Shown here: piece by piece, positions 40,633-57,281 of the stretch
Layout of the letters: every line of letters begins with the position of its first letter
Numbering within the stretch: position 1 is the stretch's first letter
Assembly: GCA_021613535.1 (NCBI GenBank)
Contig: CP075497.1
Coordinates: forward strand, 9,424,001 to 9,488,000
DNA: 64,000 bases
From: Adineta vaga
Lineage: Eukaryota; Animalia; Rotifera
Reading direction: 5' to 3'
Translations under genes and position numbers: made by a program
The notes under the pieces: model-generated
Seen by the model: only the letters and a program-made list of their open reading frames with translations
Told to the model about the DNA's origin: nothing
Database searches by the model: none

Positions 40633-42664
40633 ATGGAGCGTAATAATTTCGCTTTATCTGATGATATAATGGATATCAATGAATGTATCTCTGTAAATTC
40701 GTCACTGATTTCCATGAGGTAAATAGTTTTATTGAATTTTCTTTTTTGTAAATTCATTTGATTATTCTAGAAGTGCTTCTCCGGATGTTTTTCCAAGTCA
40801 AACTTTAACAGATGCAGTTCGATGTATTCTCGATAATAATACAAAAAATAGAAATAATCAAATCTTGACCGAATATCAAGTTGAAATATTTGAAATCATT
40901 GAACAACTTCATTCATCTCCGAAAAAATTGTGCCATTACTTAACAAAAGATTTTGCAAAATATTTTGATATTGATCTATATCTCATTACTTTTGATAACA
41001 ACGAGTTTTGTTTAAATATGGAAAACAATTATGGAAAAGAGCATAAAGCATTTTTATTATTGAACAAAGATTATACTGTTCGTGGTCCATTATATACCAT
41101 AAATACTGATGGGACGAAACAATCAGTCTTTTGCAATGATGATTCTTTAATTCAAGTTGAGATTTATTGCTATATTCTTCAATTAAATGATACTGGTAAA
41201 CTTTCTATTCGTATAACTTCAAAAAAATATTTCAATTTTTTTTAATTAGATTTATTTTCCAATTCTTCTCTACCAGAAGAATCAGACACAACCAGTTATG
41301 TTTCACAAGTATTTACAAATCAAGTTGATAATGGTAAATGATAGTAGACATAGAAATATACCATAATTATTCTTTGTTTGTGTAGTTTCCATTACTTCTG
41401 TAGACTACAATGCAGATTCGCGTGAATTATTCCGAAATATGTCTTATCAAATCTTTCGATTGTATGAAAATCTCAACATAAATCATGATTTAGTGTATCA
41501 AGCCTTCAGTTCATTTCGTAAGATGTTTGATAAACATAGTAAATAGGTTTTAAAAATCATTCTTGTAATTAGTTTCTAAAATAACACAATTCGAACATTT
41601 ATCTGCTCAAGATACTATTCTAGCTCTAAACGATGGAATCAATTGTTTATCGAATCTTGTGAAAATGGTTCAACCACATATACCTATCGGTAGTTATATA
41701 CTTCATCATAAAAATAGTTGTAAACTTCACTGTTGTTTTATTTTATTTCGTAGAAAACGAACAGCTTTCTTCAAATCAAGTATCTGCACCTGATGATACA
41801 ATGGTTTCACACATCGAAACTGAACACAATAATTCAGTTCAATCATTTATTTCAAATACAGTTTTATCAAGTGACTTCTATGGATACGAGCCACCAACAA
41901 TGAATAAATTATTGCAAACTCCGTACCATCCTCGAACAATGAAAGAATTTGCAAAGACTGGAAGTTCACCTATTCAATGTGTTGATGCTAAACAACGCGA
42001 ACCATTGCATATTGGAGTAAGAGATGATCTCCAGTATATTTGTATCTCTTTTTATGTATGTAAATGACGTTTAGGTTCCTCCAGATGATGGTGTTTCCTT
42101 ATATCTTGGTGTAACAATGGTCACTGATGCGCATACGACTCATTGTTCGAAAGTTGTCGTTCCTGATAACGCAAAAATTGAAGGAGATTATTTAATGAAT
42201 AACAATGATTTGACTTGTTTAAAGTACGATAAATGTGATCCAGATGATAAGTTTTATTTGGATGAAAAAGTACTCTATTCAAAAATTCGTCCAAAAGAAC
42301 GTGAAATGAAACAAAAAGAGTAAGTCAATAATTGATTACATATGGAATAAAACGATTTTGTTGTAGTATTTCTATTCATATGCTAAACTTATACCAACGA
42401 GGCTCACTCAATAGAAAAACAGTTCAAGATCAACAATTGAAGAAATCTAAACTGGCTCTTTGGTTTGCTGTTTATGAAAATAATATGTATCGACATGTTT
42501 CTCGAAAGTTTTATTCGAACACTATTGAAGAACGTAAATGTCACTGATCGTTAATGTACACTATTAAATCATTGCTTATCGTTACAGGAGTACAAACAAC
42601 CAAAATGACTGCTGTGAAGAAAAAGAAAACAGTATGTAAAAAGATCTCGAATAAAATTCAATGA
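40633..42664 (+). CDS. Divergent Rel-homology-like protein, array copy 1 (intact; N-terminal unknown domain; C-terminal KKKK)
   Basis: Nine exons read in frame. RHD-N-like: LLQTPYHPRTMKEF...QREPLHIG|VPP...LYLGVTMVTDAHTTHCSKVVVP...KE|ISIHMLNLYQ...LKKSKLALWFAV...FYSNTIEE. Confidence 0.7.
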
Positions 42665-45600
42665 TTAAGACATGAATGGTTTCCGAAGAGAAAACAACAA
42701 ACGATATTGTTCTAAAAGATTCAGTAAGTTGTTTCATGTTAAAATCGTCTCATCAGAAAAGCGTCACATATGTTGTGTAGCAATAAGAAACGTTTTCATA
42801 TTCAAGTATATAAAACTATTTATTCCTCAGAAAAGTTCAATTAATGTGTCACATGGCAGAAAACAGAAAAAGCAAGTTCTGGTTTTCTTCTGCTTCTAAG
42901 GCGATTGCTAAAGCGATCACTTGTCATGACACATGCATTTAATGCTATTGAAGTATGGATTAGATTCATGATATCATGTTTCTAGCTTATTCATTTGGAT
43001 AAGAGCTATCAAAACAGAGATTCTTTCATTTTAATTAACTTTTAAACTGAGATATTTTTCTCATTTTTTATTGCTTTCCTAATACTTTTACAAAGTAAAA
43101 TATAAGAGAAGGAGTTAATGAATTTCTTCTCTCTTAACCTAATTTTTGTCCTAAAATTGATAAGAGATTTTCATAAACAATTATATTTCTTGAACTTTTC
43201 GATCATTATCATGTTCTGTTGTTTCTTCTTGGAAGATATGTCTTTATTAATTCCTTTAATCTAACTGGTCTATAATCAAATGCAATTTTATCTGTCCTAT
43301 TAGTCTTTCTTTTCTACTATTTATATGTAAATAACTGCTTTATGTTTCATATCTCAAACAAAACGATACTTTTTGCATTCTATGTAGTATTATTTTTTTT
43401 GTATAAATTTTAATATTTAAACATGAATAAATATTTGTTTTTGAATTTTATAAACAAATTCGTTTGACCTTATGCGAAATTTCCAAATGAAGTATTGGAA
43501 AAAAACACATAAACTGTGTCATATTCCAACAAAAAGCCATCGAATGAATCCAACATTTTTCGCGTGTGACGCAATAGGAAATTCGCGAAGTTTCTTTTGT
43601 ATTGAAAATAACGTACTATATGACACACAAAATGGATTTTACCAGGTAAAAAGTTAATTTCCTACGCAAAAATAATATTCCAACTGTCCAAAAATTAGGA
43701 AGAAAGGTGAGTAAAAATAGATTTGTATTAAGTATAAAAGGATTGACGATATTATAGAATACTCATGTTGTCTTCATTCGTAAACATATATTGCATGCAT
43801 TCACTTCCTTCAATACTTGGTTCGCGTATGAATATATGATTAAAATCTGTCCTATTACTGTATTGATGATTCTTAATTTATCAAATTTAACACAAATAAT
43901 TGTGTATCATATGTGAAATATTGTTACTTTTAGTCTCACAGGTTTGTCTATCATCGAACAATCGTCATTAGTAAGTATGAGTTTTTCTATATGGAAAAAT
44001 CAATTATTGTACATAAATTGATTAAGTTATTTATTCAATGTCATCATAGCTTATATTTATTTAGTGACGCTATGCATGGGAATTAAAATGACATAATATA
44101 AATCAAAAGTTTAACGACATGATTCACTATTTAATAATGAAAATTTCTTGAATCACTAAATTTCACAAGAATATCTTAGCAGTTGTGAAAGTTTATTATC
44201 ATTGATATAAATTATTTCGTGTTTTCGTGTACCATTACAGTATTTTTGTCATCAGAGACGAAGTATGTTTCTATATCGATCGTGATCGATGACTACAGAG
44301 TTCATTTGCATAAAATGACCTCGGTATGTCTGGTTCGTTTCATACGTGATGACAAGAATAGTAAAAATTCGAGAAGTAAATGGAGATAGAGGAGTAGAGT
44401 TGCTATCAACTAATTGTTCGTCTATTCTATATTCTGTTAGTACGAGAAACCTAGAAATTTACCGATAGTTTAAGTTACGAAATGTTAACTGTAAGTGATA
44501 AGGTATTCGATCGAAAACGTTGTACAAGAAGCGATTTAAATGCTTCGAAATCGACTGATAACGTTTGGTAAAGTATGCTATAACCATGAATATTAGTTTA
44601 GCGTATTTTAATCGATACATTATACAAAGATGAGAAATCTTTCTATGAATCAATTAAATGACATATTTTTTGTATTTCTATGTTAATTTAAAATTTCAAT
44701 TGATAAGATCTGACTAATGTAACTTATGAAAAATCACTTTAGGTGATTTATTCTCCCACATTCACTTCCCCTTTTCCACTCTTATTCATACTCAAACGTG
44801 ATTGTTCTTCCTAGCGTGTCAATTTAAATTAGATAAGTTTTCTTTTTATCAGGAGAAAAATCCTTTGAATCATTCCTAATCTACTTTTTGACTAAAAAAT
44901 TGTGATTCGTTCTTTTTTCTTCGTTATACAGATTAATAATAGTGGTACGTGATCTAACTTTCAACATACTGTTCTTATCTATTAAATGCCATCTCATTTT
45001 TCCCACTGTGTTGGGCATTTTCCAACTTCGAAGATATATAAGCCTGAAACTTTGAAGTAGAAGAAGATGTTTCTAATTCTAATATCATCTACTTCTTCAT
45101 TCATTTCTATTCTATAACATTCTAAGAGGTGAACTATTCTACGAAATGAAGAAATGTTTTCTAGTAGCTGTCGAAGGTATGATTATTACTTAAATTTCTC
45201 GCTATTATCTAGATAGACCTTTTCTTTTATCGGAAAAATTAAGCAAGATGTAAGTACCAACTTTATCTCTGAACAATCGATGTACGAATAGCTAGTCGTG
45301 AATGTGAACTATGGTATCAAAGTAAATCGATTTTCATATGGAATTATGTATAAGGAAAGCTTCATGATAAAAAAAATTGGGCCATTACTTTGTTTTGTCT
45401 GTACACATTGTCAATGAATAAATTTACGTTTGATAATTATAGGTTGTGATTTTGCTCGTGATCATGATAGTTGTGTGTAAATTGCGTGAATAATCTGCAA
45501 TAAGAAATTATTATTCAACAAATTCAAAGTTTCCCTTATTATCAGGTTTAATGTTATATGAATCAGAATGAATAACGTTCTGTGACGCTGAAAAATGTGG

Positions 45601-46054
45601 GCGTCCTATTACGATCGAGATTGTTTTCTTCTCGAAGAACAAAAAACATTTTTTCCCATGTGGATAATATGAGTCATATACCTTTCCAGCTCGTTTTATC
45701 ATAACGTCAGTGTTTTGAAAAGATTTTTATGTGTTCTGTGTGTGCAATTAGTCATGAATGTAATGTCAGGTGTATTGATTCACACCAAAGGTATATATAA
45801 TATGACGACTTGGAAACGTTTTTACACGACATGAATTAATTCTGATTCTGTTTGTACATATAAAAAAAAGCAATTTATCGTTTTTAGTTTCATTTTATTT
45901 TCAGTTACTTATGATTCGAAATAAACTAGTCCCATGTGGAAACTAATTATTTATAACTTCATGGTTTCAGTTAATGATGAAAATTATTTCCTTCTTATTT
46001 TTCAGATAGATTACTTCTATAAAATTTTGAGACAACATAGAATCATCTATAAAC

Positions 46055-47199
46055 ATGGTTAGAACAATGGATCCCTTTGGTAAGCATAGTTTTTCTTTAG
46101 TCATTTTTTATGAGTAAATAATCAAATAGATTTTATATAAATATTTTTTTTATTCTATTAGATATGAGTACAGAATATAAATATGATCAAACAGACGCTT
46201 CAATGTCTCCTAATCTTACCCCAACTTCTCCTCTTGATCTTACAATTAATAGTAAACGATTTGTATTTACACAACAATCAACCTCACCTGTAGACTTGTC
46301 AATGAAACGTACGACCGTTTATGAAAAACAAATATCTGTTGAAAAAAGATGTGAACCACCAAAGATTATCATAGAACCAAAATCCGAATGGCATTATCGA
46401 AGTATGAAAGATTTATCTAAAAACCATCTTCCATTCTTAGCTGGTAGCGGTCGTCAACGTACACCTATTCGAGTTTCGGTAAGGATTTTATTAATTTAAT
46501 ACATTATAATTGTATATAAATCTTCATTTTTAATAGGTTCCATCAGCATCAAAACAAGAAATGTTTCTTGGTATTGCTCTTTTGACAATGAAATATCAAC
46601 CTCATCCTTCTAAAGTGATTGTTCCAGCTAAAACAACAGTGAATAATGAACATCTTACCCATGATAACAATCTTCAATGCTTACGATTCGATGAAAATTC
46701 AACGGACTATTTTGATTCCGAAACAAGATGTATTTTTTCGAAAATTAGTCATAATGAACATCACATTGGATCAAAAGAGTATGTATTCTTTTTTCTTCAT
46801 TATTAAATTCGATCTAATTTTCATGTTTTTTATTTAGTGTTCGCGTTCATATGTTTAATTTGTATCAAAATCAAACATTAACGAAAGACTTGATCGAAAT
46901 TGAACAACTTAACCTATGTAAATTATGTTTTTGGTTTTGTGTTCGAAAGAATGGACAATATGTATCTATTTCTCAACCATCCCTTTCTGTAATTATTGAA
47001 GAAAGTAAGTTTTGTGAAAATTCTGTGACTTATTGTATATTTATTTTATTTTTTATATTTAGAAAAAATGTCTAATCGATCTCGTCCATCTGATCTAATG
47101 AAAAGTTCATCACCACAATCTACTACATCATCACAATCTGACACTTCTCGTTTGGATGAAACTAGTATCGATGATGATGATGATATACATAGTCATTAA
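46055..47199 (+). CDS. Divergent Rel-homology-like protein, array copy 2 (short; two CtBP-binding motifs)
   Basis: PLDLT and PVDLS, then PPKIIIEPKSEWHYRSMKDL...QRTPIRVS|VP...LGIALLTMKYQPHPSKVI...QLNLCKLCFWFCVRKNGQYVSISQPSLSVIIEE; acidic S/D tail. Confidence 0.75.
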
Positions 47200-47925
47200 A
47201 ATCATCTTTGTCTTTCATCGGTCGAGTCATCGCGACAGTCATTCATTCAAATCTTTTTATGTAATTTTTTCAAAATGTTTTTGATAAATATTTTCTCATT
47301 CTTTGTAATTTAAATACTGTATATAAAAGAAATAACTCTATCTTGATCTTTCATATGGAAACATTGCATTACTAGCATACATTACATACAAGAGGGTAAT
47401 CATTTTGATATAATTTTGTATATGGATATGTTCTGTTTTCAGTTTTTGAATTCGGTTCGAAATCTAACGAATCTAAAGCAGAAAGAGAAATTCACTTGAA
47501 TTCTACGTTTATTAAAAAAATTGATAACAAAATTTTGAATGTAATATGTTTTTCGAACGAGATATATTTGTTTATACTTGATGACTATATTTTATGAGAC
47601 TCATTTTTCGTTTCGAAATCTAATAGATTATTGATAAGTTGTTCAATTTTCGTCTTTTATGTTTACAGATATCAAGTTGTATATCTACTACTACTACTAC
47701 TTGATAGAGGTCTATAGTTACTACACTGATGTAAATAGTTTCATTTGAGTTGAGAAAAAAATGAATCATTACATTCAGTCAATTGTACTCGTTGTATCGC
47801 TTTAATCGTATAGTTTTTTACTCGTTCTCTCGTCAGTAATATTTCTCATTTGCTGGTAGTATGCGAGAAAGTATTCGATGTCTTTACCTTTTTCTTTTCA
47901 GAAAAGTCAATTTTCATACGAAACC

Positions 47926-50093
47926 ATGTCGAATATTGTGGATTTAGCAGATAAATCTCCTCTCACTGATATTGATCATCGCTCAAAGTTATTATGGGAT
48001 CCTGATAATTATCAATTGACGTCATTTGATGGCATCTCAAAGTAGTTTTCGATATAAATTTTCTTGTACTTCTGTACTAAACTTTTTTAAATTCTAGAAA
48101 TGATAGTTCGATGGAACTCTACGGTGCAAACAGTGAATTGGATGCTTTTGAAAGTATTATAGTGAATAAGTGTATATGTACAAATGAAAATATGAACAAT
48201 GTTTCTAATAATCTGCCTATTTCTGTAAAAGAACAACTGAAAGAATACGTACAAAAACACAAAGATGCACCAACATCTCTTCCTGCAGTGGTAGAATTCA
48301 ATAATTCATTCAAAATTTATCTACATTTTATTGCTTTTCGAGTTGGGAAATTTCAACTCACTAATAAATACACTTTTCTGCATAATGATAAAGAAAAAAG
48401 ACAAGCCTTCATTGTACTTAATGGTGATAACACAATTTGTGGTCCATTGTTTATTCATGCTACTCAAGGAGAGAGAAAATTTCTTTTCGATCTGGATGAT
48501 ATGCGTGTTCAAGTTTATGTCGACCGGTATATTGAAAAGCTCAATCGAACAGGTACATTTGAGATTTTCATAAATTATTCTATTTAATTGATGTGTGAGT
48601 AGACCCAAGGTCATTTCCTGTGAAAGATGAAACGTCAAGTTCAAATGTTTGTTGTAATTCGTCTACAAGTAAGCACTTCATTTGTATATGATAGAAGATC
48701 TAACATTATTGTTTAAGATGAATTAATGGATCTTGCTGATGCTTTAATGAATGAATCTCACAAAAGTAATACGTTTAAATATTGCTATTATTTCTATATA
48801 TTACTTGTTGTTCACTTTAGTAAATGCAGTATCATCCAAAAAGAAACGTAATATTCGTTCTACTAATGATCAAAACGAACAAAAATTTATTCGAACAGTT
48901 GAAAAAACAATTCTATGTCACAGTAGGATAATACATCTTTTTGTACAAATTATTCATTGCTATACATTCTTTCAAGGAAACAATACTGATTTAACCAATA
49001 GTGCATCTGTAAATGTATCTACAACTCATCAGCAAGGAACACCTTGTACATTCATTCTTAATCAACCGTCAATAATACGTATGTCAGGTAGATAATTATT
49101 TGTTAACTATTTTTTCCTAATTCAACCATTTATTATGTATTGTATCTGTAAAGACCATGGTGGTAAGGGAATTAATGACGTTTCTACAAGTGAATATTGA
49201 ATCGTCTTTGATTTCTTTAATGATTTTCTGTCTTTATTTAAGCTGGCACAATGCTTGCAAATACTTCAATGACAACGACCCCTCTTCCGTCAGATACAGT
49301 ACACGTACCTCAATCTATTCCAACGCCAATGTCAACATCCATTTCTTATGCAAAACCAGAGATTTTAAAACAACCACAAGAAAATTGGAAGATTCGCTAT
49401 CCACGTGATATAATACCTCAACAAAATACAGGCGCACAAGAAAATGGAAAAATATTTACCGGACTTTTGCAAGGTGTTGGTAGTCAACGTTCACAAATTG
49501 AAGTAAAAGTAAGATCTCGTCAAAGTTTCATAATGGTCACACATCTGTTAATACAATTATTTTTCTAAGGTTCCACTAAGAATGAACCGGCAAATGTATC
49601 TAGCAAGTATGGTACGTACTATTAATAATCTGCCACATTCTTTAAAAATTATTGTTCCGGAAAAAACAAAAGTCAATAAAGATCGTTTCAATCGTGATAA
49701 CTATCTCAATTATTTTGAATTCAATAATTGTAATTCAAATTATATCGTCGATCTCGATGCGTTGATTATTTATATGAAAATTACTCCTCTAGAACATCAA
49801 CAACAAATTAAAAAGTATGTTTTTACTATTACTCCATATCATCCTACTAATTTTTTTAAAGAATACCAATCTATATGTTTAATTTGTATCAAAATCAACA
49901 TTTAACAAAAGATCTCATCAACCGTGAACAACTCGAAAAATGTCAGTTAGCTTTTTGGCTGTGTGTAAGACAAAATGGAAACTTTATACGGATTTCACCT
50001 GATTCATTGTCTAGAATAATTACTGAAAGTAAGATTGATCGACAACTTTTTTACTTACCAGTTTTTGTTTTACTGCTTTTAGAGAAGAAATAA
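47926..50093 (+). CDS. Divergent Rel-homology-like protein, array copy 3 (intact)
   Basis: Multi-exon, in frame; KKKR motif; PEILKQPQENWKIRYPRDI...QRSQIEVK|VP...MVRTINNLPHSLKII...MFNLYQ...QLEKCQLAFWLCVRQNG...SLSRIITE. Confidence 0.72.
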
Positions 50094-51376
50094 AAAAGAA
50101 AATGATCTTGTATGTCTGCTGAAAAAAAACGTTTGTTCTTGAAATATTGCCAGCAATAATATAAAATGAATCGAATACGCTTTGTATTTCAATCTCACAC
50201 ATGTGAGTTTTTTCTTCCTTTTTTTTTCTATTTTTTCAAAAAAAAGCACGTGTTTTTATTTTTATTGAAACTTTATTTTAGTCTTAAAGAAAATGCTCCC
50301 ATCATCTAATTCAATATAAATAAAAATAAAAATAAATGTCAGTAACTCTTTTCAAGATCTTTGTTGTAAATCAAAATTAATGTATCATGATTTTAAAATA
50401 TTTCTTTACATGACCCTATTCTTCGATGGATGTTCATAAGAAAATTTTTTGAAACTGAAGGATCGTTAACGACACGCAAAATTATGAATATGACTCATTT
50501 CTTCTACAGATAATTTCGAAAAGTGTCTTTTGTAACGTAGTAGAAAGTAATACGATTAAAGTATGGTTGATATGTATAAAGCGGATTCGACGATGATTAT
50601 TTTGCACACTGATTAGACTGAAATGAACAAGAATAATGTAACGATGTTAATGTGATACATATATTCGAACAATCTCGAAGCTTACTGACGAGAAACATAG
50701 AAATATGGTTTCTAGAAACTATAATATCACCCATACGCTTAATCGAATTTGATGAATGAATAAGTTGATTGATTCTTTTCTCCACTTAAAGCTTTTTCCT
50801 TACATTAATCTTTTTAATACTTATAGTAAACTTCAATGCTAGTCAATCACCTCTTACTCGTTCTAGCAGATTTCCTGTCTTGAATTTAGTGCAACGAAAC
50901 AGACTGTATACGAACACAATGATATAATCAGAGATTTATCGAAGTATTTCTGTATTATTCATTTTTATCATCTATTTTCTATTTGAGCCGTATAATAGTG
51001 CAATTTTAACGATCTCACACACTGATCATTACATGTATTTGTCTCAGACTTGACTGTTTTTCTTTAATTGAGACATTCGATGTTAACCACAGTATATTTA
51101 AAAAATAAAAGGAATACACCTAAAATGAAAAAAAAATGTCAGTTTTCACATCTTAACTTTTTTACACTTTCGTTCTTTCGCCATATCTGAGAGTTGCGCG
51201 AACATGATTTTCGCAGTAGGCAAAAACATACTGTCTTGCTGTGAGATGGTGCAATAATTTTTTTCTCCTTCTTATGAATCACATTCAGCTGCTTATCCAC
51301 TATTAATTGCTTATAAATATACACAGAAGGCATTACATGTTTTCAACAGGTACATTAATGTAGTAATCTATTTAAT

Positions 51377-53867
51377 ATGGTAGAAGACACTTCATCAATG
51401 GCTGACAAAATAGGGCAGTTTTCAATTGAAAATCAAGAAATGGCAAGAGAGCTTAGTTTGGATCAATCTGATGCACCCGGTGAATCATTATTTCAATCTA
51501 TGAAGTACTACTAGTTTTAGTGTTTAAAGCATTTGCAAATGTACTACCTTTTACTTAGATCGTGGAATATACCTGTTGGATGGTATCTATGGGTCAAATT
51601 TACAGAATGTATGAGGCTGATAGTACAATATGGTTGTGATCAAAAGCACCCGTCGATTGAGATACAACAGACTCTAGATCGTCTAACGTGTTTTGATACA
51701 CCACAACAATTAGATGATTTAGTAAATCGGTGTGTTGACCTGTACAAAACTCTGATCTATATAATTCAAATTAATGATCATCTTCCCATCACTGAATCTA
51801 ATATTCGTTGTTATGAGGGAAATGCCAGTCAATCTGCACAAGGAAACGTCATCGTCTTGTTTCGTATATGTTACATAAATCCGAAACGTGCTTATTCGCA
51901 TTACTGTGTGTTACTAATACAGATGGTTATCCACAGACTTGTTTTGAATCAGACGATGACAATGTTCAAGAATATATTGTCAAGTATATGCGTGCCTTCA
52001 ATGATCAAGGTAAGTTTAAGGAGGATGAAAAGGATGGTTTTGTATTTTATGAATTTGTTTTAAGTATATCGAAAGTCGACTTCAAGCATAGATCATATTA
52101 GTGATAATCATGACGCTACAGCAAATATTCAAGAATCAGAGAACTCTGATAGTTTATATATGTTGCTCCCGTTACTGCCAAATATAAATGTTCTTTCAGA
52201 CAATGATGACTTGACGCTTTCTACTGGTACATTGGCTGTTCAGAATCAAAGCGATTTGGCATCGATTTGGTTAAAGTATACTTTCCAATGTATTCCTAAA
52301 ACGATCATTCATTTATATGTTTATTTTCGTCATAGAGAAGCTTTTCCAGATTCAATAATGAGTAACCCAAATTCTTCATTCGATATGGCTTTCGCTGCTG
52401 ACGATATTCCTCATCGACCTAAGACTACAACAGCATCGTCTGAAAATCATGGTAAGTCTTCTTTTGTATCTACAGAATCAATATAACATCTACGTATTTC
52501 TATACTTTTAAGTAGAAGAAATGCCGGGACATCCGGCGATGGAGACAACTGATGGTAAACTAATGATAAATGACGATTTACAAGGACGAAAATTGATTTT
52601 GAACAACATTGTAAGAAAAGTGAAACGATTAAAAACTGCACAAACAAGTACCAATATTCTTACATCAAACACTGATTCTTCTCAACATTTGTTTTCCTTA
52701 TCTGATACTCTTATTCAACCAGCATCGAAAATCGAGTCGCAACCAGAAACAATTTGTAATTCAGTACAAGAATGTGATTCGATAAAGATTATCACAAATC
52801 CGAAGTGTCATCGTCGAGCATGTATGCTAGGAGATTTGGCAAAAAAGAAGTGTCCACTTGTTCAAGCAGGTGAAAAACGACAACAGAAAGTTTATCCTAA
52901 AATAGAAGTAGTCAATTAATATATTCTAATATCCATTAGTAAAAATTATACATTTTAATTGTAGATTAAAAGTGCTAGTGCAGAATATCTTCGTGTCAGA
53001 GCTGTTACAAAGAATTACGAGCCACATCCATTACAATGTGTTGCACCTGAAAATGTTCAAGTGAATTTAGAATTGTAAAAGACAGAACATGAACGAAAAT
53101 GTTTACAGTGTGATCTGTATAGTTTTGATCCATCGCTTGAATGTACTTATTTACCAATCGACGATGAAGAACGACGAAATCATCAAAAAATGTAAATGTT
53201 TATTTCTTGGTATATTCAAGTTTTTTGTTCATTCATTCTTTTTTCAGAGTAAAAGTTCATCTTTTTAATTGGAAAAAGAGTGGTTCAATTAGTAAAGAAG
53301 TTAGTCAACGAGAAAATCTTCGATTATGCAGACTTGAATTTCGTCTGTGTAAGTTATCAAGTGAAGGTGAATATGAATGTATATCGTCACCTTGTTATAC
53401 ATCAATTATCGATCAAGATAATTTTATTCCTAGATAAATTTACTTTTCTATAGTACTATGTCTACAGAGGATGAAGATAAGACAAATCAGCGTGATCCAG
53501 AGCAATTGTGTGCAATGGGTGAACAGAAAATTGTTATTCCGTTAAAAACCTGTTGTTCAGAAGAAGATAATATGATATAGATTCATGTTCATGATTTGAA
53601 ATGTTTGACTGATACTATATGTTTAGATGTACAATTTAATGAAGAAGAATTGGATCAGAACAGTTTTACAATGGACACAAGAGAATTGTCACTAACTTCA
53701 CCAACTCGAACAGACGGATGTGATGAATCTCATAGTAAGAATAAAATTTACAAAAAATCTCTTAAATTTACATATCATTCATTTTTCTTTTAGATTTATT
53801 TGAACACAAATACTTAAATTCAGCTCAATCTGCGATCAAACGCTTGTTTCCTTTTAAATCCTCTTAA
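51377..53867 (+). pseudogene. Divergent Rel-homology-like gene, array copy 4, with IPT-like C-terminal exons; disabled
   Basis: IKIITNPKCHRRAC...KVYPKIE|...VRAVTKNYEPHPLQCV...NLRLCRLEFRLC...SSPCYTSIIDQ. Frameshift ~51815-51870, in-frame TAA 53076-53078, apparent GT>AT donor losses near 53418 and 53567. Confidence 0.7.
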
Positions 53868-54232
53868 TCACGCACTTTCGTCGAAAATAATCAAAGATAA
53901 AGATACCAAACTCTTATAATTGCTATATTACTCTAGAGTTATTGTAAAATTGTAAACATGCATGAAAAAAAACATAATATTCTTTGTTTCTATTTGATGT
54001 CATAGAAGTTGTTCTTTTTCATCTGCATAAATATATTACATTTATTTACTTCATACCATGCTTTTTTTCCAGTTGGAAAGAATGAATCATATATTCCATC
54101 TCACTTTTTATTTCTTTCTTTCTCTTTTTTTTCTCTCGCTTTGATAAAACTCTGCTTATCATATTCATACACATCTCCTCTGCACTCATTTTCTTTTATG
54201 AAAACGTGCCTTGATTCGTTGAAGACAAATCA

Positions 54233-56473
54233 ATGAATAACGATGATCAAATGAATTCATATATGAGTACTACTCAAAATTATGGTGTATCATGTAGTAA
54301 TGATATGAGGTAGAACGTATTTTCTTTGATTTTATCATACAAAACTAACTTGTTATTTTATAGCTCTAAACCTGGAGGTTTTTCTGTAAAATCAATGTCA
54401 AGTTTACTTAAGGTTGCTCTATTTATTATCTCACAAGGAACTTATCGACAAAATGATATTTCTACCCGTACGCGACACTCAATCGATCGGTTGATAGATG
54501 AATTTGATGACATTACAAATCGAAAAGAGAACTCTTTCGAGTTTTACCGTGGTTTGATCGAAACATATGAAAATCTTTTTGGTATATATCTTTGTTTAAT
54601 TGCTGACTATGGTGGTACATATACAATTGTGGACAGAAGCTATTTTCCTGATACCAATAAACAACAATTCAATCAAAATCCTTACGCCTTTATATACTAT
54701 AATATGAAGGAAAACAAATATAGTCCATTATACAAGGAGATGGATGGATGCATAAGCACTATATTTTCAGAATTTGATAATTCTGTTTGGAATCATGCCC
54801 AGTCATTTGTCGATCAATTGAATAAAAATGGTACGTTCAGTTATTTTATTCCTAATTCTATTTTGATTTTATACAATTTCATATTCTAGTGATATATTCC
54901 AATCAAAATCAAGCAGATCATTTGTACAATTTGCAGGAAGAAGATTCTGATCGTAAGCCCTAATTTTTATAAATATTTTGTATTTTAAAATCAATTTAGA
55001 TATGGTGATTGATGATACACATGCAACAACAAATCAGCCATCCGAAAGTATGCCGTAAAATAAATTTATTAATGTATGATTTATACGATTGATATGTAAA
55101 GGTACGATTACCCATGAAATAATTTCGACAGCTTCTGCTGTCATCGAACAAATGGTTCAAGAAATTGTTCTATTAATACCAAACTTTGGAGCAAGACTCG
55201 ATTCAATTGTGTATCAGAATGATATAGTTGGTATGCATGTTGACAACATATATATATATATATAAGCAAAATTAATTGTTTTCTTTTCTATAGGTTTCGA
55301 GATTGAGAATCTCAATCAAATGCTCCCTAAGAATACAGGCGAATTAATACAACAACGGCTACTTGTTATTTCGAACATAGTTGAGATGGCGGCAATCAAC
55401 CCAATTTCACGTACATTTAAATTTCGTTACATTGATTTTAACTATCATTTATATTGTATATCTTTAGAAAATGACAATGAAACTATGCCATCAACTGTAG
55501 TAACCGAAGACCAAAGTCAACTAGGTAATCCGAATGAATATTACAAAATATGATTTTTTTAAATAATTCATTATATTTCTTTAGATCAATCGAATCTACC
55601 AACAAATCTCTCACCTACGACTAATGCTTCTCAATCTCGTCGTGCAACGACATCAACACCACTGCGACAGAAATCACCTCCAAAAATCACTACACAACCA
55701 AAACCAACGTGGGATTATCGTACTATGAGAGACCTCTGGAAAAAAGAGTTACCACTTCTTGCTGGTGTTGGTTCTCAACGCACACCGATACGTGTTAAGG
55801 TAAAATACAGCTCATACTGAATGATCAGTAGAATATAAAAGTCAGTCATATCATTTTCAGGTACCTTCAAAAAGCGACGGCCAAATGTATCTTGGTGTGA
55901 AGGTTTTAAATCTTAAGCAAGAGGAACACGGCTCAAAGTAGTCGTCCCAGAACATACTAGTGTAAATATGAAACATTTCATCAAGGACGATGATCTTAGT
56001 CGTTTGGTATTCGATGACTGCAATAAGAATGATTATTTTGATCCAGTGAACAAGGATGTTTATCTAACGATTAGTTCTGAAGAGCATAAAAAAGGAGAAA
56101 AAGAGTAAGCAATTATAAGCACTAATCTGAAAAATTAATTAATGAAATCTTTTCACAGTGTACGGATACGCATGTTCAATTTGTATCAAAACGGCACAAT
56201 AACAAAAGACAATATTCAAGATGAAAAACTTGACAAATGTTTATTAGCTTTTTGGTTTTGTATCCGAAAAGATGGTGAATATAAACCTATTTCAAACGTT
56301 TCATTTTCGAATGTGATTACAGAAAAGGTACGACTGATGCATATGTAAAAACAGTTCCTTATACCCAAGCGATTTATTCTCTTTAGAAAAAAAAGCTGCT
56401 AAATAATAAACAAAACCAACTTACGATTATGAAACAAAGATTAATAACATACTTTAATGGGAAGAAACACTAG
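54233..56473 (+). CDS. Divergent Rel-homology-like protein, array copy 5 (one 1-nt frameshift at ~55936; pseudogene or assembly error)
   Basis: PPKITTQPKPTWDYRTMRDL...LLAGVGSQRTPIRVK|VP...MYLGVKVL...EHGS/KVVVP...MFNLYQNG...KLDKCLLAFWFCIRKDGEY...FSNVITEK. Confidence 0.68.
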
Positions 56474-57281
56474 TTTTTATATGATTACATACTTTTTCCC
56501 AACAAAGTGATGTCAACGAACGTTTGCTTCCTACATGACTCATCACGCTTGCGTTACGTGAATTTGTTTTACCATGTAACCACTAGAAAATTTTTCTTCG
56601 TTTTTGTCAAAGAAAATGTGACCTGGTCTTATTTTCATATGTTGATGCAAAGCATAAATAAAAGTTCGTCTGATATACAATAAACTTATACTTACCTGAA
56701 CACAGTATCTCTATAGTCAAGACAGTACGGCACTATCGTTCACATTATTCTAATAGTATAACCCAATTTACTTTGAAATTCTCATCGAGGAATATTGTTT
56801 TCTCTGAAAAGATAATAAAAGATGTTAGATAGTAAACGATTTAATTAAACTTTTTGAGTCGATATAGTTGTTATGCTATTATATTATGGCGTCGTTTTTT
56901 TTGATGAATTGCGATTTAAAAACTGTTTAGAATATCGATTACATACAATAAAACATGTCCTTTTACTTAATACGTCTTCATATACTTGATAAAGGTGAAC
57001 AAATCTTTTTATTCTATACGATGGAACTTAAACATTATCTCATCATGATCATTCTTCTATTTTTTTCTATCGCAATATTTCCTATTTTGTTGAAGCAATA
57101 GAGAAAAAACGAACTCATCGAAGGTCATGAAATTAGATCTCATCTGATTGATTACATATTCCATTCAATATACACGCAATCTTATCTATAGTATTTTTCT
57201 GTGTGTATTTATATCCAACTTTCTATTTAAAACTTCATTCATTCATTTATTTATTTATTTCACTCAATCACACGTATCACG

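What the first reader, a model, noticed from the sequence alone, without database searches (positions are those of the whole stretch)
40633..56473. Tandem array of five highly divergent Rel-homology (NF-kB/NFAT-like) genes
Seen: five same-strand paralogues share a ~170-aa C-terminal domain and largely the same intron positions (after P-I-x-V-x before VP; phase 2 after KE; near the terminal I-x-E). Established: RelA RHD-N reads roughly EIIEQPKQRGMRFRY...HPTIKI...[20 protein letters not shown]...[33 protein letters not shown]. The array gives KIIIEPKSEWHYRS...RTPIRV...IALLTMKYQPHPSKVI...QLNLCKLCFWFCVRKNGQYVSISQPSLSVIIEE (copy 2) and VRAVTKNYEPHPLQCV...NLRLCRLEFRLC (copy 4): all anchor segments, in order. 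Basic NLS-like runs follow the domain. Inference: a lineage-specific, rapidly evolving family of Rel-fold transcription factors, probably annotated only as hypothetical proteins, possibly an immune or stress regulatory system.
Basis: partly seen in the sequence, partly recalled or inferred. Interest (0 to 1): 0.9.

Follow-up and report, generated by a model that had tools for sequence, protein, structure and literature searches.

The report
Divergent Rel-homology gene array in rotifer
Five neighbouring genes of the bdelloid rotifer Adineta vaga, filed as hypothetical proteins, encode very divergent relatives of the DNA-binding half of NF-kB/NFAT. Most have lost the dimerising half and carry a degenerate deubiquitinase-like head, a Rel-protein layout I found described in no paper.

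Summary
Window 40633-56473 (Adineta vaga) holds five same-strand paralogues. They share a ~185-aa domain in three exons, with identical intron positions and phases.

Three lines of evidence identify that domain as the N-terminal DNA-binding subdomain of the Rel homology region:
- Pfam RHD_DNA_bind is the only recurring family among relatives (best E 6e-7, 26.6 bits against a cut-off of 27).
- The nearest named clusters by language-model features are all RHD.

The genes are not canonical Rel proteins:
- Copies 1, 2, 3 and 5 end just after this domain, with no IPT dimerisation domain. Copy 4 keeps about two thirds of one. Relatives elsewhere keep a full one.
- Four copies carry an N-terminal domain that looks like an OTU remnant without the catalytic His.
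- Copy 2 instead carries conserved PxDL[ST] CtBP-type motifs.

RNA contigs show copies 4 and 5 spliced and expressed. Their stop and frameshift in the assembly are absent from other alleles or reads.

The family has at least 12 loci in the genome. Every named member is a bdelloid (Adineta, Rotaria, Didymodactylos). The array is older than the Adineta-Rotaria split. DNA binding and any immune role are untested. The scan noted similar genes elsewhere in this genome (s1-489556, s1-494275).

The parts
40633..42664 (+). Copy 1 gene: OTU-like N-domain (about 40745-41230), linker exons, RHD-N exons e1 (to 42016), e2 (42075-42319), e3 (42367-42533), and a basic tail exon (42588-42664)
   Evidence: ORF segments and junction context. 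Orthologue P0015 of A. steineri is 55-67% identical exon by exon. Expression was not tested here.
46055..47199 (+). Copy 2 gene (NCBI I4U23_030247, P0092, 295 aa). It has no N-domain. It has two PxDL[ST] motifs (about 46230-46301), RHD-N exons e1 (46161-46478), e2 (46537-46781), e3 (46838-47004), and an acidic tail exon (47063-47199)
   Evidence: The domain model has pLDDT 92.3.
47926..50093 (+). Copy 3 gene (NCBI I4U23_030248, P0001, 540 aa): OTU-like N-domain (about 48111-48551), linker, RHD-N exons e1 (to 49508), e2 (49570-49814), e3 (49862-50028), ending in K-K-K
   Evidence: Rotaria orthologues P0087-P0089 are 52-53% identical over the domain.
51377..53867 (+). Copy 4 gene: N-domain exon (51559-52006, with a 1-nt assembly gap at 51842), RHD-N exons (e1 to 52907, e2 52965-53191 with TAA at 53076-78 in this haplotype, e3 53248-53417), two IPT-like exons (53468-53566, 53627-53734), and a short last exon (53794-53867)
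   Evidence: Spliced RNA contigs in three runs. The allele in X14 and X15 reads CAA instead of TAA. The IPT exons align to the first two thirds of the relatives' IPT-like domain.
54233..56473 (+). Copy 5 gene: N-domain exon (about 54362-54829), linker exons, RHD-N exons e1 (to 55799), e2 (55861-56104, with a 1-nt frameshift at 55934 in the assembly), e3 (56159-56327), and a basic tail exon (56387-56473)
   Evidence: Eight GT..AG junctions appear in RNA contigs. An extra A behind 55934 in RNA runs X14 and X15 and in DNA run X1 restores the frame.

Best explanation
The five genes belong to a family of highly divergent Rel-homology proteins known so far only from bdelloid rotifers. Each encodes the N-terminal, DNA-contacting subdomain of the Rel homology region (shown by fold, profile and language-model evidence).

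The fuller members of the family read OTU deubiquitinase, then RHD-N, then an IPT/TIG-like domain. This is seen in Didymodactylos, in Rotaria, and in three copies on another A. vaga chromosome. I infer that this was the ancestral layout.

In this array the layout has been cut down:
- Copies 1, 3 and 5 keep a degenerate OTU-like head without the catalytic histidine, and have lost the IPT domain.
- Copy 4 keeps a truncated IPT domain.
- Copy 2 has lost the head and carries conserved PxDL[ST] co-repressor motifs.

Function is inferred. The proteins most likely act in the nucleus as sequence-specific DNA binders. They would use the conserved Arg and acidic residue of the recognition loop. Lacking the Rel dimerisation domain, they would bind as monomers or with other partners. 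Copy 2 would act as a CtBP-recruiting repressor. At least copies 4 and 5 are transcribed and correctly spliced (shown).
For: Fold:
- The AF2 model of P0092:65-253 has pLDDT 92.3 and pTM 0.88.
- The 43 best Foldseek matches in the PDB are all Rel/NFAT/TonEBP, with E from 2e-6 to 1e-3.

Sequence:
- Pfam RHD_DNA_bind hits P0082 at E 7e-6, or 5.8e-7 for the domain alone. It spans profile positions 3-164 of 169. It also hits P0029 at E 0.012. No other family scores better or hits more members.
- A pairwise alignment to c-Rel puts R-x-R-Y on R-F-R-Y and K-P-H-P on K-P-H-P.
- The loop Arg is present in 31 of 32 members and the following acidic residue in most.
- ESM features give 0.92 to an RHD cluster, and all ten best named hits are RHD.

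Other:
- PxDL[ST] occurs in 12 of 14 copy-2-type proteins and in none of 20 others.
- Expression and splicing of copies 4 and 5 are shown.
- The N-domain matches the OTU domains of relatives by hhalign at 88% probability, E 3e-6. Those OTU domains themselves hit Pfam OTU at 2e-12 and 6e-7.
- The types are old: tree, and the same-strand array in Rotaria sordida.
Against: - No window copy reaches any Pfam threshold.
- A family profile finds no Rel chain among PDB sequences.
- The six-frame PF00554 search of the genome is blank, though that search rang nowhere.
- The canonical R-x-R-Y-x-C-E-G loop is only partly kept. The first Arg is H, K or D. Tyr is kept only in copy 3. The Cys is absent. In copy 4 the conserved Arg is Cys in this haplotype.
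- Four copies lack the dimerisation domain that every studied Rel/NFAT protein uses on DNA.
- No experiment shows nuclear localisation or DNA binding.
- The OTU assignment of the window's N-domains rests on one profile-profile match. Pfam and the ESM Atlas give nothing.
Confidence: 0.8

Rival explanations
1. The fold is Rel-like, but the proteins no longer bind DNA. Fused to an OTU-type module, the domain would serve as a protein-interaction or decoy module in a ubiquitin-linked pathway. It might, for example, titrate partners of the IPT-bearing paralogues.
For: Four copies have lost the dimerisation domain. Several canonical DNA-contact residues are substituted. The family is persistently fused to OTU, and in one A. 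steineri protein also to a Ulp1-type peptidase.
Against: The recognition-loop Arg and acidic residue are kept in nearly all members, and the His of the K-P-H-P strand in every member. Copy 2 has no OTU-like part. It carries conserved CtBP-type motifs, which make sense for a DNA-tethered repressor. NFAT can bind DNA as a monomer (established knowledge; PDB 1owr).
Confidence: 0.15
2. The array is a set of decaying pseudogenes left by an old tandem expansion.
For: In the assembly, copy 4 has an in-frame TAA and copy 5 a frameshift. Copy 4 has a truncated IPT-like domain, non-GT donors, and a Cys in place of the loop Arg.
Against: Copies 4 and 5 are transcribed and spliced at all predicted junctions. 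Other reads carry CAA instead of TAA, and carry the extra A that restores copy 5's frame. A third 1-nt gap (51842) is contradicted by all four runs, so the assembly has indel errors here. Copies 1-4 have orthologues in other Adineta species or in Rotaria with the domain core conserved. No clear orthologue of copy 5 turned up.
Confidence: 0.04
3. The domain is a different member of the p53-like beta-sandwich class (velvet, p53, Runt, STAT and others), or a convergent fold. In that case it is not homologous to Rel.
Against: Rel/NFAT matches stand 3-5 Z units above velvet and p53 and cover the whole domain. Pfam RHD_DNA_bind is matched nearly end to end in a relative. In fuller members the domain is followed directly by an IPT/TIG-like domain, as in the Rel homology region.
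Confidence: 0.02

Closest known systems
Rel/NF-kB proteins (RelA, c-Rel, p50, p52, Dorsal/Gambif1)
   Different: Identity is 12-19%. The recognition loop is one residue shorter and lacks the Cys, and mostly the Tyr. Four of the five window genes have no dimerisation domain. No ankyrin or transactivation regions were seen. The N-terminal OTU-like domain is not part of any Rel protein I know of.
NFAT1-4 and NFAT5/TonEBP
   Different: There is no calcineurin-regulatory region. The IPT domain is absent in most copies. Sequence similarity is no closer than to NF-kB.
OTU deubiquitinases that regulate NF-kB (A20, OTUD7B, OTULIN)
   Same: Relatives in Didymodactylos and A. steineri have bona fide Pfam OTU domains, N-terminal to the RHD-like domain. 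The window's N-domains align to the C-terminal half of these.
   Different: Here the OTU is in the same polypeptide as the RHD. In the window copies the His of the H-Y motif is replaced by R, C or Y/S, so they are probably inactive.
Fungal velvet domain (VosA, VeA)
   Different: The match is clearly weaker than to Rel/NFAT. There is no sequence-profile link.

Membership tests
Rel homology region proteins (Rel/NF-kB/NFAT) | N-terminal RHD subdomain fold (s-type Ig sandwich with the recognition loop) | tested here: met
Rel homology region proteins (Rel/NF-kB/NFAT) | Match to Pfam RHD_DNA_bind (PF00554) at or above the gathering score of 27 bits | tested here: not met
   There is no hit for window exons, for P0092 or for P0001. 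The best relative, P0082, scores 26.6 bits at E 7e-6, just under the cut-off. Three of 32 members hit at E <= 1.
Rel homology region proteins (Rel/NF-kB/NFAT) | Recognition loop R-x-R-Y-x-C-E-G with its DNA-contacting Arg, Tyr and Glu | tested here: inconclusive
   The second Arg is kept in 31 of 32 members and the acidic residue in most. The first Arg is H, K, R or D. Tyr is kept only in the copy-3, Didymodactylos and chromosome-3 types. The Cys is absent. The mapping rests on sequence alignment, not on superposed coordinates.
Rel homology region proteins (Rel/NF-kB/NFAT) | C-terminal IPT/TIG dimerisation subdomain directly after RHD-N | tested here: not met
Rel homology region proteins (Rel/NF-kB/NFAT) | Dimerisation | tested here: inconclusive
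   The homodimer job on the relatives' IPT-like domain gave no verdict.
Rel homology region proteins (Rel/NF-kB/NFAT) | Sequence-specific binding to kappaB/NFAT-type DNA sites, and nuclear import | not testable with these tools
   Only basic runs after the domain were seen.
OTU deubiquitinases (N-terminal domain of copies 1, 3, 4, 5) | Homology to the OTU profile | tested here: inconclusive
   hhalign of the window-type N-domains against the OTU domains of P0082, P0073 and P0059 gives 88% probability, E 3e-6, over 79 columns. Pfam finds nothing in 13 N-domains. The ESM Atlas finds nothing.
OTU deubiquitinases (N-terminal domain of copies 1, 3, 4, 5) | Catalytic Cys and His | tested here: not met
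   In the hhalign alignment the H-Y of the true OTUs faces R-G (copy 1), C-G (copy 3) and Y-S (copy 5). The Cys region did not align, and reads T or N by eye in the copy-1 type.

The most novel reading that the evidence does not exclude
Bdelloid rotifers are reported to lack canonical Toll-like receptors. They may have rebuilt Rel signalling as single polypeptides in which an OTU-type ubiquitin-handling module is fused to the Rel DNA-binding domain. That family would then have split into specialised monomeric half-Rel factors: a pseudo-OTU sensor type and a CtBP-recruiting repressor. If so, ubiquitin state would be read directly by the transcription factor instead of through an IkB/IKK cascade.
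Probability: 0.15. Interest if true: 0.85.

Novelty: new variant of a known kind. Interest (0 to 1): 0.62.

Why it matters
Rel-homology factors are central to animal immunity and stress responses, and their evolution outside the well-studied phyla is poorly charted. No paper in the searched library links rotifers to a Rel homology domain. Reviews there say that A. vaga lacks canonical TLRs and that rotifer immune pathways are undescribed (PMC8609888, PMC6043800).

This array shows that bdelloids carry an old, expanded Rel-derived family with at least 12 loci. Its architecture is unusual: an OTU fusion, loss of the dimerisation domain, and a CtBP-motif variant.

It gives concrete candidates for the missing transcriptional end of bdelloid defence or desiccation responses. 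It is also a natural experiment on whether an isolated RHD N-domain can work without its dimerising partner.

Novelty is tempered in one respect. Automatic pipelines already label one Rotaria relative 'RHD domain-containing protein' and a Didymodactylos relative 'OTU domain-containing protein'.

Tried and rejected
- Pfam on single exons of the window gave nothing.
- Six-frame searches of the genome with PF00554 and PF16179 were blank, but these searches rang in no control genome, so they are uninformative.
- The family profile against PDB sequences found no Rel chain.
- P0082 alone against the PDB gave only a non-significant c-Rel alignment, used for residue mapping only.
- Pfam on the IPT-like tails and on the N-domains gave nothing.
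- The ESM Atlas on copy 3's N-domain gave no usable hit.
- A search of the genome with P0082's domain gave nothing.
- Complex prediction on a homodimer of the relatives' IPT-like domain returned no verdict. It is not evidence either way.
- Literature searches for rotifer or Adineta with Rel homology or NF-kB found no relevant paper.
- I looked for an N-domain for copy 2 in the 3.4-kb gap upstream and found no coding signal.
- The pseudogene reading of copies 4 and 5 was considered and largely rejected on the read evidence.
- Joined (spliced) models of copies 1, 4 and 5 were not built or searched. Those copies were handled exon by exon, by reference. Copies 2 and 3 were studied through the database proteins P0092 and P0001, which are the NCBI products of these genes.
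Full report
**What the window is.** The window is G000:C6:9424001-9488000. The genome has 100.8 Mb in six pieces at about 30% G+C. Exact database matches identify it as Adineta vaga. Copy 3 encodes NCBI protein I4U23_030248 (P0001, 540 aa). Copy 2 encodes I4U23_030247 (P0092, 295 aa). Both are named 'hypothetical protein'.

**Checking the observation.**
- tblastn of copy 2's exons against the window finds exactly five + strand copies of the most conserved exon. It also finds matching upstream exons. Whole-genome searches repeat this.
- The exon alignments show 31-62% identity in e3 and 24-44% in e2.
- The junction sequences show the same three intron positions and phases in all copies. The one variation is that copy 4 has unusual donors.
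- The domain is about 185 residues long and is split over three exons.
- Gene spans are: copy 1 40633-42664, copy 2 46055-47199, copy 3 47926-50093, copy 4 about 51377-53867, copy 5 about 54233-56473.

**Defects in the assembly, and expression.** In the assembly, copy 4 carries an in-frame TAA at 53076-53078. Copy 5 carries a frameshift near 55934. I laid contigs of three RNA-like runs and one DNA run on 51000-56900.
- The RNA-like runs carry GT..AG junctions that the DNA run lacks. All predicted introns of copies 4 and 5 are among them, so both genes are transcribed and spliced.
- In X14 and X15 position 53076 reads C, giving CAA. X17 and the DNA run keep T.
- An extra A behind 55934 restores copy 5's frame. 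It is present in X14, X15 and the DNA run.
- An extra A behind 51842 appears in all four runs. It explains the frame switch inside copy 4's N-domain exon.
- Hence at least one of these defects is an assembly error. The stop is allelic or strain-specific.

**Identifying the domain.** Single exons hit nothing in Pfam, so I took four steps.
1. A profile of the e3 exon was searched against 1.84 billion representative proteins. It returned 86 hits. These include full-length annotated proteins of Adineta, Rotaria and Didymodactylos.
2. Pfam on those proteins gives RHD_DNA_bind for P0082. The score is E 7e-6 and 26.6 bits against a cut-off of 27, over profile positions 3-164 of 169. It also gives RHD_DNA_bind for P0029 at E 0.012. 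Over a 32-member alignment it is the only family whose hits are better than noise: 3 members, best E 5.8e-7.
3. An AlphaFold2 model was built for copy 2's domain, using that alignment. It has pLDDT 92.3 and pTM 0.88.
   - The 43 best Foldseek matches in the PDB are all Rel, NFAT or TonEBP chains.
   - These matches cover exactly the N-terminal subdomain: RelA 19-188, p50 39-245, NFAT1 405-572.
   - Velvet scores 8.9 and p53 about 8.
4. An independent language-model search puts RHD clusters first, at 0.92 with 197 shared features. All ten best named hits are RHD.

The Rel-homology assignment is therefore well supported. The rival p53-class folds are clearly weaker.

**What is and is not conserved.**
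- A pairwise alignment of P0082 with c-Rel is not significant by itself. It places R-x-R-Y on R-F-R-Y and K-P-H-P on K-P-H-P.
- Carried through the family alignment, the second loop Arg is present in 31 of 32 members. The acidic residue three positions later is D or E in most. The His of the K-P-H-P strand is invariant.
- The first Arg is H (copies 1 and 2), K (copy 3), R (copy 4) or D (copy 5).
- The Tyr is kept only in copy 3 among the window genes.
- The Cys is never present.
- Copy 4 in this haplotype has Cys where the conserved Arg should be.
- DNA binding is therefore plausible but probably has altered specificity. This is inference.

**The rest of the proteins: the dimerisation domain.**
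- Fuller family members continue after the RHD-N domain with about 100 more residues. These members are the Rotaria proteins P0028, P0029, P0058 and P0068, the Didymodactylos proteins P0073 and P0075, and three near-identical copies on chromosome piece C3 of A. vaga (loci L001-L003).
- In the window, copies 1, 2, 3 and 5 stop 3-45 residues after the RHD-N domain.
- Copy 4 has two spliced exons that align with the first two thirds of the IPT-like domain and then ends.

**The rest of the proteins: the N-terminal domain.**
- Copies 1, 3, 4 and 5 share a domain of about 150 residues at the N-terminus.
- Distant relatives have a true OTU domain at that place: P0082 at E 6e-7 and P0073 at 0.0026. 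P0059 of A. steineri has both an N-domain of the window type and a separate OTU domain (E 2e-12), and it ends in a Ulp1-type peptidase.
- Profile-profile comparison links the window-type N-domain to the C-terminal half of those OTU domains, at 88% probability and E 3e-6.
- The catalytic H-Y is replaced in copies 1, 3 and 5.
- Pfam and the Atlas do not confirm this link, so I rate it as probable only.

**Copy 2.** Copy 2 has no such head. It carries two PxDL[ST] motifs. Such motifs occur in 12 of 14 copy-2-type proteins of Adineta and Rotaria and in none of 20 other family members. By established knowledge this is the CtBP-binding consensus, and it fits a DNA-tethered repressor. An earlier scan note raised the same idea (s1-494637).

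**Age and size of the family.**
- A profile search of the genome finds matches at the five window genes, at four loci on C3, at three on C5 and at one on C2. The family therefore has at least 12 loci.
- A maximum-likelihood tree of the domain groups A. vaga copy 2 with Adineta and Rotaria proteins. It groups copy 3 with Rotaria proteins (support 93/100). It resolves separate copy-1, copy-4 and C3-type clades.
- Exon-wise best hits agree with the tree.
- A Rotaria sordida contig carries copy-1-type, copy-2-type, copy-4-type and a copy-3-like head in the same-strand order.
- One Rotaria gene model fuses a copy-3-type and a copy-4-type gene.
- The array therefore predates the Adineta-Rotaria split. 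The copies are old and divergent rather than recently and rapidly evolving.
- All named members are bdelloid. Many unnamed fragments could not be placed.

**Known or new.**
- The library holds no paper that mentions rotifers together with a Rel homology domain, or A. vaga together with NF-kB.
- Two papers state that A. vaga lacks canonical TLRs, and one of them that rotifer immune pathways have not been reported (PMC8609888, PMC6043800).
- UniRef's automatic names already call one Rotaria relative 'RHD domain-containing protein' and a Didymodactylos relative 'OTU domain-containing protein'.
- The scan's own notes list a dead-OTU-plus-RHD gene and a ten-gene RHD array elsewhere in this genome. 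I did not check those.
- I class the finding as a new variant of a known kind. The DNA-binding fold is Rel. Three features are not described for Rel proteins, as far as I know: the OTU fusion, the loss of the dimerisation domain, and the CtBP-motif form.

**Limits.**
Copies 1, 4 and 5 were handled exon by exon, by reference.
- Residue mapping to Rel contacts rests on sequence alignment.
- The homodimer job gave no verdict.
- Whether bdelloids also keep canonical NF-kB or NFAT genes could not be settled.

Noticed in passing
window 53418-53467 and 53567-53626: Two introns in the IPT-like part of copy 4 are removed in RNA contigs of three runs. In the window they begin with AT, not GT (both read G|ATAAT...AG). 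They are either AT-AG introns or an allele difference at the donors.
   Followed up: partly
window 51842, 55934, 56386, 56547: There are single-base differences between the assembly and public reads. An extra A behind 51842 appears in all four runs. An extra A behind 55934 appears in two RNA runs and the DNA run. There are further 1-nt insertions at 56386 and 56547. The assembly seems to carry small indel errors in coding sequence, and these distort gene models such as P0003.
   Followed up: partly
L001-L003 (G000:C3:5415000-5469000): A unit of about 22 kb is present three times in tandem at 99.2-99.5% identity. Each unit carries a fuller family member (OTU-like head, RHD-N with an R-x-R-Y-x-x-E loop, IPT-like domain). 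Next to it is an ORF that looks like a glycosyltransferase.
   Followed up: partly
alignment A7 (IPT-like domains of relatives): The IPT-like domain ends in a conserved pattern of one Cys near its start and H...H-P-x-P-C at its end. This could be a metal site. Copy 4 of the window lacks that end.
   Followed up: no
P0059 (Adineta steineri, 819 aa): One relative combines a window-type N-domain, a Pfam OTU domain (2e-12), the RHD-like domain and a Ulp1/SENP peptidase C48 domain (7e-30). It has two different ubiquitin-like-protein proteases around a Rel domain.
   Followed up: no
window 42900-46050: The 3.1-kb spacer between copies 1 and 2 has no open frame over about 75 codons on either strand and no exon similar to the family. 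The other spacers in the array are about 0.4-1.3 kb.
   Followed up: partly
They are conserved in 12 of 14 copy-2-type proteins across Adineta and Rotaria and are absent from 20 other family members.
   Followed up: yes
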